From the NCBI GenBank assembly GCA_965644315.1, contig CBFFRQ010000031.1:124001-188000 (forward strand): 64,000 bases of DNA. Direction: 5' to 3'. Within the stretch, counting starts at the first letter, position 1, and each line of letters begins with the position of its first letter. Positions 41,344-44,960 of the stretch are shown here, in pieces. A program made the translations under genes and the position numbers. The notes under the pieces are model-generated. The model was not told the DNA's origin. It saw nothing but the letters and a program-made list of their open reading frames with translations, and searched no databases. This DNA comes from Caecitellus pseudoparvulus (Eukaryota > Protista > Bigyra: Bicosoecida).

Positions 41344-42553
41344 ATGGCATCTCTTGCAGGGTGAGTTGTTCTAGACGCAGCCTTGGGCCTGCTGCACGTG
41401 TGCGGCTCAGAGCTATGCCCGGCACGGCGTAAGCATGCCTGCGTTGTCCATGTGCTGCTACTCGGCAGCTGTGCGCCAGCGGTGGAGGGCGGGGGTTCCG
41501 CCTGTGCCAGAGCGGGGTTTTGGTAGCGCTGCAGCTTGCACGCTCCCTGCGCCAGAGTGCCATTGCTGCAGCTGTATATTCGGCTGATCTTGTGCTCTGT
41601 CCCTGTGCTTTTGGCGTGTGCCGGCGGCGCCATGTTTGAAGAAACACACTCCCCACGCCGACTGGCCTGCACCACGCCGCTGCCCGCCCCCGCTTTGCAG
41701 CCGCGAGGATGACGTCGCCAAGCTGTTGGCTGCCAACGCCCACCTGGGCACCAAGAACCTGGACCCCGGCATGACCGACTACGTCTGGCGCCGCCGCCTG
41801 GATGGCGTGCAGATCCTGAACGTGGCGTCCACCCTGGACAAGCTGCGCCTGGCTGCCCGCATCATCGCCGCCGTGGAGGACCCCGCTGATGTCTGCGTCG
41901 TGTCCGCACGCCCCCACGCCCAGCGTGCCGTGCTGAAGTTCGCCAAGTACACCGGTGCCCAGAGCATTGAGGGCCGCTTCACCGCTGGTACCTTCACGAA
42001 CCAGATCACCAAGCAGTTCAAGGAGCCCCGCCTGCTGATCGTGACCGACCCCCGCACGGACTTCCAGCCCGTGAAGGAGGCCTCTTACGTGAACATCCCC
42101 GTCGTGGCCTTCTGCGACTCCGACTCCCCCCTGAACCACGTCGACTGCGCCATCCCAGGCAACAACAAGGGCAAGCTGTCCATCGGCCTGCTGTACTGGC
42201 TGCTGGCCCGCGAGGTCCTGCGCATCCGCGGCACCATCGCCCCCACCGACCCTTGGGATGTCCCCGTGGACCTCTTCTTCTTCAAGGATGCTGAGGATGT
42301 CAAGGCCATGGAGGAGGAGCAGAAGGCCGAGGCTGAGGCCGCCGCCGAGGGCTGGGACGCCACCGCCGACCAGGGTGCCGTCGCTGCCGAGTACTCCGCC
42401 GCCCCCGCCACCTTCGCTGCCCCTGATGCCAGCGCTGCTGCCTTCGCTGCCCCCACCGGCGACTCCTGGGATGCCACCGCCCCTGAGGGTGCCCCCGCTG
42501 AGGGCCAGTGGAGCGCCGCCCCTGAGGGTGACGCCACCTGGACCGGCCAGTAA
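41344..42553 (+). CDS. RPSA: 40S ribosomal protein SA (uS2); intron 41361-41700
   Basis: [74 protein letters not shown] and DLFFF. Codon bias is strong. Confidence 0.98.
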
Positions 42554-43204
42554 ATGCTGCGTGCCGCGGCATCCCCGCTACCCCCTTGACACTTGACTTT
42601 CTGACACTCCCTCCGCCCCTGTGCGATGATTTGACTTGGCAGGCGCTCGCCCTCGCAGCCCGCACGCCTCGCAGCCCCCCTCGCCCCACCCAGTTGGCAC
42701 GGTTGGTTGATCTGCGGGTGCAGGAGTGCACGGCCTCCCCCCCTCCCCCACTGCCACACCACCCAGTGGGGAGGCCCGTGCACCCTGTGCTTCAGCCCGT
42801 GCACACCTGACCTGCCAGCTCCCCCCGACTGCCCTAGACGACCACCACCTTCGCGTTTCGTCAGTGCAGCGCAGCAGCACGACACGACGTGGGATCGCGT
42901 GGAGGATGGAGAGCGCCGGACGATCGGTGCAGGAGAGCAACAAACCAAACCAGTGCTGCTCGCTTCACGATTGAAGCGGGTGGTGACGCTAGCGATGTCC
43001 GGGGCGGGGGCCACGGCTGGCGCATGTGGTATGCGCCTGCTCAATCCCCCCCTGGTGCCTGCGTCGTGTGGTGTCTGCGAGGAACAGCCCTGCCTCGTCA
43101 AGAGTGCAGGGGCGGAAGGAAGGAAAGAAGAAGAGTGTCTTGGGGCTGGCCTGCCCCGTGGAGGATTCGGCAATGCATTGAGCGATGCATGGGGAGCGTC
43201 TGCA

Positions 43205-44633
43205 TCACTGCTGCGCCTTCTTGTTCAGGCGCTTGACGACGACGGCCGCCGCTGCAACGCCGGCCACTGCGCCGGCCACCGCGCCCAGCCCTGCCGCCCA
43301 CAGCAGTGAGCCGCAGCCCCAGGAGCCGCCGCCCCCCTCACCGCAGGCGCAGTCCGGCCCACAAGGCTGAGGGCAGGGACACCCGCTGGCTGCTCCAGTG
43401 CCGCACTTGCAGCCATCTCCGCAGTTGCAGGGGGGGGGACAGGCGCAGCCGCCGGCAGCGGCAGGCGCAGTGCCGCACTTGCAGTCGTCCCCACAGGGGC
43501 ACGGCTCAGGGCAGGCGCAGCCTGGCGAGCGCTTGGTTGGCGCAGAGCCACAGGCACAGGATGGACCACACTGGCAGGTGGAGCCGCAGGCACAGCTGGA
43601 CGCGCAGCAAGGCTCCGTGGCCGCTGCGGCGGGGGGTTCGCCCTGGAACGCCTCAAAGGCGGGGCTGCGGGGCAGGGCGGCCAGGTCCATCTCAGCGATG
43701 GTGCGGCGGATGAGGGCGACGATGGCGGGGGTGGCCACCCTGGCGGCTTCCAGGACCTCCTCGTGGTTGGGCGCCTCGGACGGGTCGTCGCCCGGCCCCA
43801 GACACTTGTTGGTGATGAGGGAGACGCCCATGACGGAGAGGCCCGCGTGGGCCGCCGTGACGACCTCAGGCGCGGTGGACATGCCAACGGCGTCAGCGCC
43901 CAGGATGCGCATGGCGCCGATTTCCGCGGCAGACTCGAAGGCGGGCCCAGACAGCCCTGCGTACACGCCCGAGTGCAGCTTGTCGGCGACGCCCTGCTCT
44001 GCAGCCACGGCGTGCAGCTTGGCTGCCAGGGCGCGGGAGAAGACGTTGTTCAGGGAGGGGAAGCGGGGGCCGTACCGGGTGTCATTCTTGCCCACCAAGG
44101 GGTGGTTGCCCGCCAAACCAGGCAAGTACAGCTGGTCTTTGATGCACATGAAGTCGCCCACGTTGAAGGCAGGGTTCACGCCACCGGCAGCATTTGTGAC
44201 GACGACGACGCGGACCCCCAGCGCGGCAAAGACGCGAATCTGAGCTGCAATGGTGGACAGTGGGTGGCCCTCGTACGCATGCAGGCGTCCACGGAGGAGG
44301 ATCTGCCGAGGGAGGCGAAGGTTGGGTTCAGAGCGTGTGCGGGGGACAGTGCGGCACAGCGTTTCGTGGGGCGTTTCGCCCACGCCAGGGCGCACGCACC
44401 ACGACTTTGTCTTCGATGTCCCCGATGACGAACTCGCCGACATGTCCCTGCACGCTGGGCACAGGGTATGTCGGCACTTCATCGAAGGGGATGCTCTTCT
44501 TGTTGGTGACGGCGCCAACCAAGGAAGCCAAGCCGGAGCCGCAGACCACGCCGACATCAGGCACGCGGCCGCCCAAGTGCTCACGCAGGCAGGCCGTGAC
44601 GCGGTGCACGTCCACTTCTGTGTGTCCAGCCAT
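43205..44633 (-). CDS. PNP: Purine nucleoside phosphorylase (trimeric type) fused to a metallothionein-like Cys-rich domain and a C-terminal TM anchor; intron 44399..44303; about 443 aa
   Basis: CGSGLA, QGHVG, GRLHAYEG, TNAAGG, GPAFESAAE, VGMSTAPE, ITNKC and PNHEEV. The same exon continues in frame into 26 Cys (CxC motifs) and LLWAAGLGAVAGAVAGVAAAAVVV-KRLNKK. Confidence 0.93.
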
Positions 44634-44960
44634 GGTTCAAGGAAGCTGCGAGGCGGGTGCGCGGTGCTGTTGGTGCGCTCAGCACGGCTGCAGGAAGCTG
44701 GCCCCAGAAGGTGACACCCGCGAAAGTTGCCCTCCCGGGCACTGCACTTCAGAGGGCCTTCAACTCACAGGTATCCACGGGAAGCTCAGCCAAGGAGGGT
44801 GGGGGCTGCAAGGGGGGTCTCAGGGCAAGCAACAAAATTGCGTGGGCATGAAAAGATTGCTGCCGGCGACGGATTGGCCTGCGCATTGTCCACCTGCTGC
44901 CCCTGACCTTCGCACGCCGATCACGAGCGGAGTGCGTTCGTTGTGCAGTGCGCTGGCACC

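What the first reader, a model, noticed from the sequence alone, without database searches (positions are those of the whole stretch)
43205..44633. Purine nucleoside phosphorylase fused to a metallothionein-like domain and a tail anchor: candidate membrane-tethered arsenate/metal-handling enzyme
Seen: the PNP domain keeps all residues equivalent to the human active site (S33, H64, R84, H86, Y88, F200, E201, M219, S220, N243, H257). It continues without intron or stop into 43609-43313, about 100 aa with 26 Cys in four CxC-rich modules: CCASSCACGSTCQCGPSCACG, CACPEPCPCGDDCKCG, CACPPPCNCGDGCKCG and CPCPQPCGPDCACG. A 24-aa hydrophobic helix (43306-43235) and the basic tail KRLNKK follow. Established: CxCxxxCxCG.xCxCG is the plant/algal/fungal metallothionein pattern. 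PNP accepts arsenate in place of phosphate, and mammalian PNP promotes arsenate-to-arsenite reduction in the presence of a nucleoside and a dithiol. Metallothioneins bind As(III), Cd, Zn and Cu. Inference: the fusion could supply its own thiols to reduce and trap arsenic, or make purine salvage metal- or redox-regulated, on the cytosolic face of an organelle (a short TM plus basic tail is typical of mitochondrial or peroxisomal tail anchors). I know of no described PNP-MT-TM architecture.
Basis: partly seen in the sequence, partly recalled or inferred. Interest (0 to 1): 0.88.

Follow-up and report, generated by a model that had tools for sequence, protein, structure and literature searches.

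The report
Purine enzyme with metallothionein-like membrane tether
A marine flagellate makes an intact purine-salvage enzyme (PNP) with a predicted membrane anchor and, in the linker between them, a recently gained block of 26 cysteines built like a metallothionein; the fusion is real and transcribed, but nothing here ties it to arsenic.

Summary
Observation confirmed. The minus-strand gene (44633-43205, one 97-nt coding intron) encodes 443 aa: a trimeric-type PNP with all listed active-site residues, a 99-aa block with 26 Cys in four modules, a 24-aa hydrophobic helix and a basic tail. A transcript contig lacking both introns carries the whole fusion. The anatomy splits in two. The tail anchor is not special to this gene: about 30 unannotated, apparently protist PNPs have one, including two relatives' orthologues (both next to an RPSA gene) whose linker has no Cys. 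The Cys block was found only in this species (1.84-billion-protein search). It evolves like a modular metallothionein: modules 2 and 3 are a tandem duplicate, another strain has lost one module and duplicated another in frame, and all four variants at Cys codons are synonymous. Best reading (0.55): a tail-anchored PNP carrying a tethered metal-thiolate buffer that works largely apart from catalysis. Arsenate reduction is chemically possible but unsupported (about 0.08). Metal binding and localisation are untested. New variant of a known kind; other scan notes report Cys-rich inserts in other proteins of this genome.

The parts
44769..44837 (-). 5'UTR exon
   Evidence: L006 1-69 aligns here; X5 contig joint
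44646..44768 (-). 5'UTR intron, 123 nt, GT..AG
   Evidence: skipped in X5 and L006
44400..44633 (-). First coding exon (ATG at 44633), PNP residues 1-78 with S33 and H64
44303..44399 (-). Coding-region intron, 97 nt, GT..AG; the orthologue in L009 has an intron at the same place
43691..44302 (-). PNP domain residues 79-282 (R84, H86, Y88, F200, E201, M219, S220, N243, H258)
   Evidence: AlphaFold2 pLDDT mostly above 90; pN/pS about 0.12 across strains
43610..43690 (-). Post-domain helix and Ala/Pro linker, residues 283-309; its first half is shared with other tail-anchored PNPs
43547..43609 (-). Cys module 1 (8 Cys, residues 310-330)
43472..43519 (-). Cys module 2 (6 Cys, residues 340-355); absent from the variant allele (72-nt in-frame loss)
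43400..43447 (-). Cys module 3 (6 Cys, residues 364-379); 78% DNA identity to module 2 at a 72-nt period
43340..43381 (-). Cys module 4 (5 Cys, residues 386-399); duplicated (63 nt, in frame) in the variant allele
43235..43306 (-). Predicted C-terminal transmembrane helix, residues 411-434
   Evidence: hydropathy; helix 418-442 in the model; equivalent helix in about 30 related PNPs
43205..43234 (-). Basic tail KRLNKKAQQ (net +4) and stop codon
43165..43204 (-). 3'UTR (at least this far); 43165-43188 overlaps the 3' end of the convergent RPSA/uS2 transcript
   Evidence: L006 ends at 43165; plus-strand poly(A) behind 43188 in X6

Best explanation
The protein is an active inosine/guanosine-type trimeric PNP held by a C-terminal tail anchor on the cytosolic face of an organelle, an arrangement inherited from a wider group of protist PNPs. 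In this lineage the free linker between enzyme and anchor gained a Cys module and expanded it by in-frame tandem duplication into a metallothionein-like block. The block most likely binds Zn, Cd or Cu(I) as thiolate clusters and acts as a membrane-tethered metal buffer or sink that rides on a housekeeping enzyme (up to 78 Cys per trimer), with little direct part in catalysis. Shown: gene structure, one spliced transcript, conserved catalytic residues, orthologues with anchor and no Cys, module gain and loss, conservation of Cys among strains. Inferred: enzyme activity, trimer, membrane insertion and topology, which organelle, metal binding and metal type, independence from catalysis.
For: Spliced full-length transcript. 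Block is 26% Cys with 1 aromatic residue in 99, within the 15-35% Cys and under 10% aromatic definition in PMC7216689. Weak Pfam Metallothio_PEC hit, E=0.012, below cut-off; nearest Atlas clusters are metallothioneins, score 0.82, a lead only; low pLDDT as expected of a metal-free thionein. All 4 variant sites in Cys codons are synonymous (chance 0.0002-0.005) while spacers show 6 amino-acid changes. In-frame module loss and gain in two independent data sets parallels Oikopleura MT population variants (PMC8283569) and the modular fungal Cu-thioneins (PMC4755600). Orthologues P0003 and P0128 (61% identical, tree support 100, RPSA as neighbour) have linker and anchor with no Cys. No signal peptide is evident and 28 of 29 related tails end with net positive charge.
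Against: No metal-binding data. No curated metallothionein family is matched at its cut-off. Polymorphism counts are small, some come from low-depth contigs, and two spacer changes may stem from the duplicated module. Several related PNPs have small Cys clusters just before the anchor, which could point to a lipidation or redox role. Metallothioneins are normally small, inducible and soluble; a fusion to a housekeeping enzyme is a poor way to regulate capacity. The helix is Ala/Gly-rich and only moderately hydrophobic.
Confidence: 0.55

Rival explanations
1. Metal- or redox-gated enzyme: loading or oxidising the block compacts the linker or cross-links the three subunits, changing PNP activity, stability or distance from the membrane.
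For: The block sits in the only link between enzyme and anchor; the variant allele keeps four modules and 25 versus 26 Cys, which may mean that length or capacity matters.
Against: Orthologues lack the block; it is separated from the domain by a 27-residue linker and has no confident contacts in the model; modules are lost and gained between strains.
Confidence: 0.17
2. One reading: PNP makes ribose-1-arsenate, the tethered thiols reduce it to arsenite and trap it.
For: PNP accepts arsenate and, with a thiol, yields arsenite in vitro (PMC3368394); the phosphate-site residues are intact; the thiols are covalently attached.
Against: The reaction is generic to phosphorolytic enzymes and not known in vivo (PMC12608789). 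No arsenic-related gene among the immediate neighbours, which are RPSA, RPAP1, an RRM protein and DUF4795. Single lineage only. The genome has a phytochelatin synthase. From general knowledge: metal-loaded thiolates are poor reductants, the block would be consumed stoichiometrically, and phosphate usually exceeds arsenate in seawater and cytosol.
Confidence: 0.08
3. The Cys residues serve membrane attachment or structure (S-acylation, disulfides, haem or Fe-S binding) rather than thionein-type metal clusters.
For: P0175, P0186, P0208, P0212 and P0255 have 4-6 Cys just before the anchor, on separate branches; C408 lies three residues before the helix.
Against: 25 Cys in regular CxC pairs over 90 residues is far more than acylation needs; a cytosolic location disfavours disulfides; feature search points to metallothioneins.
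Confidence: 0.11
4. Tolerated junk: a repeat expansion in a GC-rich linker with no function.
For: Found in one species only; linker varies freely across the family; Cys-rich reading frames arise by chance in this genome.
Against: Cys codons vary only synonymously; between modules 2 and 3 all six Cys are kept while 8 other codons changed residue; all length changes seen are in frame.
Confidence: 0.07
5. Annotation artefact: the Cys block is intronic or belongs to another transcript.
For: One RNA contig skips 72 nt of the block.
Against: L006 is spliced at both introns and keeps the whole block; the 72-nt skip has non-canonical ends, an 11-nt microhomology and also stands in a DNA scaffold.
Confidence: 0.02

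Closest known systems
Trimeric purine nucleoside phosphorylase (NP-I; human and bovine PNP, PF01048, TIGR01697)
   Same: Fold, all listed catalytic and substrate residues; best PDB match E=6e-72 over residues 3-278.
   Different: Solved PNP matches end by residue 283; this one adds about 160 residues with a Cys block and a predicted tail anchor.
Unannotated tail-anchored protist PNPs (P0003, P0128, P0004, P0008, P0130, P0176 and others; one cluster includes a Tripos fusus transcript)
   Same: PNP, post-domain helix, variable linker, one hydrophobic helix, short basic end.
   Different: Linkers hold 0-6 Cys, not 26. No paper describing this group was found.
Modular metallothioneins (Cryptococcus CnMT1/2 and Tremella TmMT, PMC4755600; Oikopleura OdiMT2, PMC8283569; plant type 4/PEC, PF02068)
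   Same: Tandem 5-8 Cys modules of CxC pairs with short spacers; 26% Cys; module number varies within a species.
   Different: Those are stand-alone soluble proteins; here the block is internal to an enzyme-anchor protein. No sequence match above a family cut-off; metal binding untested.
Cys-rich appendages of metal-handling proteins (P1B-ATPase tails, COG0523 inserts)
   Same: Cys clusters attached to a larger, sometimes membrane-bound protein; examples exist in this genome.
   Different: Their host proteins transport or deliver metals; PNP has no metal cofactor or known metal role (own knowledge).
Mammalian PNP as arsenate reductase in vitro (Radabaugh 2002; Gregus and Nemeti 2002, as cited in PMC3368394 and PMC12608789)
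   Same: Same enzyme family and phosphate site.
   Different: Uses free dithiols; in vivo role unknown; no fused thiol donor described.

Membership tests
Trimeric PNP (inosine/guanosine type) | Profile match over curated cut-off | tested here: met
   PF01048 131.9 bits vs 25.1; PRK08202 297 vs 218, TIGR01697 280 vs 197; TIGR01700 266 is under its 293 cut-off
Trimeric PNP (inosine/guanosine type) | Phosphate site S33, H64, R84, H86, S220; ribose site Y88, M219, H257; 6-oxopurine pair E201, N243 | tested here: met
Trimeric PNP (inosine/guanosine type) | Phosphorolysis activity and trimer | not testable with these tools
   needs purified protein
Metallothionein | 15-35% Cys, under 10% aromatic residues (PMC7216689) | tested here: met
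   block: 26 Cys and 1 Trp in 99 aa; whole protein only 30 Cys in 443
Metallothionein | Cys in CxC / CC motifs, modular | tested here: met
Metallothionein | Small (up to 300 aa) stand-alone cytosolic protein | tested here: not met
   internal block of a 443-aa spliced product
Metallothionein | Homology to a described MT family | tested here: inconclusive
   PF02068 16.4 bits vs cut-off 31.8; Atlas 0.82; P0166 E=9e-4
Metallothionein | Metal-thiolate cluster formation; metal induction | not testable with these tools
   needs ICP-MS/ESI-MS and exposure experiments
Tail-anchored membrane protein | Single hydrophobic helix within about 30 residues of the C-terminus, no N-terminal signal | tested here: met
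   helix 411-434 with 9 residues after it; the N-terminus aligns with soluble PNP from residue 3; simple hydropathy only, no dedicated predictor
Tail-anchored membrane protein | Membrane insertion and organelle | not testable with these tools
   basic end is compatible with mitochondrion or peroxisome (own knowledge), not shown
Arsenate reductase | Arsenite formation in vivo, arsenic-linked context or induction | tested here: inconclusive
   no arsenic-related gene among the immediate neighbours; activity not testable here

The most novel reading that the evidence does not exclude
A self-contained, membrane-bound arsenate reductase and arsenite trap, in which PNP arsenolysis is coupled to its own fused thionein: a natural enzyme that turns a side reaction of phosphorylases into a detoxification route.
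Probability: 0.08. Interest if true: 0.85.

Novelty: new variant of a known kind. Interest (0 to 1): 0.55.

Why it matters
It is a transcript-supported natural fusion of a metallothionein-like block to a metabolic enzyme with no known metal role, caught soon after it arose: relatives without the block and strains with different module sets are at hand, so gain, expansion and function of such a domain can be tested directly. Protist metallothioneins outside ciliates are barely known (PMC7216689), and size-limited screens would miss one buried in an enzyme. The search also exposed a wider, apparently undescribed group of tail-anchored PNPs, which suggests purine salvage at an organelle surface in many protists. 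The construct pair (with and without block) is also a clean test of whether tethered thiols can make PNP's arsenate side reaction matter.

Tried and rejected
Other PNP-Cys fusions: word-index search on residues 195-365 of exon 2 and exhaustive search of 1.84 billion representatives gave only the same species' protein (P0001) and one 82-aa protein at E=9e-4; metagenome scan gave one same-species contig; viral contigs none; Atlas feature and shape searches none. HMMER down-weights Cys-rich matches, so distant blocks may be missed. Donor metallothionein gene in the own genome: protein searches found only this locus; DNA pattern scans were at control level (122 vs 96, 60 vs 76) and the inspected hits looked like off-frame noise; an intron-split small gene could be missed. 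Single-sequence structure prediction was useless (pLDDT 36). Organism name: not obtained; the assembly matches none of the four Cafeteria burkhardae assemblies in PMC6972860 nor Halocafeteria. The 'Symbiodinium sp. KB8' label of P0001 is taken as a contaminant contig because its DNA is 98-99% identical to the window, UTRs and introns included. The careful tree did not finish; the quick tree was used. Paper searches found no PNP-metallothionein fusion or tail-anchored PNP. Slips corrected.

Full report
Observation. The finding is a minus-strand gene of a GC-rich eukaryote (genome 30.6 Mb, 215 contigs). The coding sequence starts at 44633, is broken by a 97-nt GT..AG intron (44399-44303) and ends at 43205, giving 443 aa. 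Residues 1-282 are a purine nucleoside phosphorylase: PF01048 E=3e-38, NCBIfam PRK08202 and TIGR01697 over cut-off, best solved-structure match E=6e-72, with S33, H64, R84, H86, Y88, F200, E201, M219, S220, N243 and H258 (human H257) in place. Residues 310-408 (43609-43313) hold 26 Cys in 99 aa, in modules of 8, 6, 6 and 5 Cys plus C408. Residues 411-434 contain the most hydrophobic stretch and are followed by KRLNKKAQQ. An alignment-based AlphaFold2 model is confident for the PNP domain, unconfident for the Cys block and helical at 418-442.

Is it one transcript? Yes. Logan contig L006 (SRR18354346) lacks both the coding intron and a 123-nt 5'UTR intron and runs from 44837 to 43165 at about 99% identity, with the full 443-codon ORF. 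RNA run X5 shows both splice joints and run X6 has a contig crossing from the PNP C-terminal helix into the Cys block. These are assembled contigs, so they show presence, not level. Whole-protein searches and folds used P0122, an existing transcript-derived record. The two exons were joined only inside local scripts, for residue numbering and for counting variants against loci already fetched.

The tail anchor is old. Among PNP homologues, about 30 distinct unannotated proteins carry a linker, one hydrophobic helix and a short end, net positive in 28 of 29 examined. In a quick tree 27 of them fall in one 38-member clade (SH-aLRT 99) and the rest among other protist PNPs; the named oomycete, Hondaea, animal and bacterial PNPs lack the helix. 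One such cluster includes a Tripos fusus transcript. I found no paper on tail-anchored PNP.

The Cys block is young. The closest relatives, P0003 and P0128, are about 61% identical, group with this protein at support 100, sit next to an RPSA gene in the same convergent arrangement, and P0003's gene shares the intron position. Their linker is Ala-rich with no Cys. They are not very close (RPSA 74% identical), so the gain is dated only to after that split. No other PNP with such a block was found. Five other tail-anchored PNPs have 4-6 Cys before the helix.

The block evolves like a modular metallothionein. Modules 2 and 3 are 78% identical in DNA at a 72-nt period, with all six Cys kept. A metagenome scaffold (L042) has module 2 missing and module 4 duplicated, both in frame (72 and 63 nt), and RNA run X6 shows the same two joints; this allele has 25 Cys against 26. 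Across alleles, four variant sites lie in Cys codons and all are synonymous, expected by chance at 0.0002-0.005, while spacers show six amino-acid changes; numbers are small. Composition meets the published definition (PMC7216689); family matches are weak (PF02068 E=0.012; Atlas 0.82). Tandem Cys modules and within-species repeat variation are known from fungal and tunicate metallothioneins (PMC4755600, PMC8283569), which are stand-alone proteins. No stand-alone donor gene was found in this genome, with limited power. A CobW-family protein and a P1B-ATPase of this genome also carry Cys-rich inserts, unrelated enough not to be hit by the block.

Mechanism. Most likely (0.55) an active PNP trimer is anchored on the cytosolic face of an organelle and the block binds Zn, Cd or Cu(I) as thiolate clusters, a tethered buffer that is largely independent of catalysis. 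The independence is inferred from orthologues that lack the block, its position beyond a linker, and module turnover. Rivals: metal or redox gating of the enzyme (0.17), acylation or other structural use of the Cys (0.11), coupled arsenate reduction (0.08), neutral expansion (0.07), artefact (0.02).

Arsenic. The premise is real: PNP forms ribose-1-arsenate and, with a thiol, arsenite, as do GAPDH, glycogen phosphorylase, polynucleotide phosphorylase and ATP synthase (PMC3368394); whether this happens in vivo is unknown (PMC12608789). Nothing here points to it: the neighbours are RPSA, RPAP1, an RRM protein and DUF4795, the fusion is confined to one lineage, and a phytochelatin synthase is present. 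It stays a cheap experiment, not a supported function.

Organism. Not identified. It is a marine organism whose DNA is in seawater, sediment and Mariana Trench metagenomes, with a short 18S gene (1,697 nt). A bicosoecid flagellate is likely (my inference from GC content, genome size and 18S length; an unchecked scan note says the same), but the assembly is none of the four published Cafeteria burkhardae assemblies.

Verdict. Observation confirmed, interpretation partly supported. New variant of a known kind: known enzyme, known kind of Cys block, known kind of anchor, in an arrangement not found elsewhere. Interest 0.55; 0.85 if the coupled arsenic mechanism held (probability about 0.08).

Noticed in passing
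P0003, P0004, P0008, P0130, P0172-P0191, P0230, P0255, P0257, P0260, P0264: A wide, apparently undescribed group of protist PNPs with a C-terminal hydrophobic helix and basic end (predicted tail anchor); possibly gained or lost several times.
   Followed up: partly
window 43165-43188: The 3' ends of the convergent PNP (minus) and RPSA (plus, about 630-nt 3'UTR, poly(A) behind 43188) transcripts overlap; JGI contig L010 joins the two through this overlap. The convergent arrangement is kept in relatives L009 and L063.
   Followed up: partly
window 41361-41694: RPSA first intron, skipped in contig L010.
   Followed up: no
P0166 (82 aa, MMETSP transcript): N-terminal hydrophobic segment followed by a metallothionein-like Cys stretch: a possible membrane-anchored metallothionein in another protist.
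   Followed up: no
L050 (G000:C17:90107-93670, plus strand): CobW/COG0523-family protein with a Cys-rich insert of CC...C repeats resembling the start of module 1.
   Followed up: partly
L058/L059 (G000:C89:362474-367582, plus strand): P1B-type ATPase with two CxCxC-type clusters in its C-terminal tail.
   Followed up: partly
P0175, P0186, P0208, P0212, P0255, P0004: Small Cys clusters (some CP[FV]-type) just before the anchor in other tail-anchored PNPs, on separate branches.
   Followed up: no
L004 / P0001 (GCA_905221625.1): A contig of the 'Symbiodinium sp. KB8' assembly is 98-99% identical to this window, so it is probably a contaminant; its gene model also removes a 16-aa stretch of the PNP domain as a false intron.
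   Followed up: partly
G000:C68:1433973-1455758: Tandem array with a period of about 1.5 kb and at least 14 copies, seen in the pattern scan.
   Followed up: no
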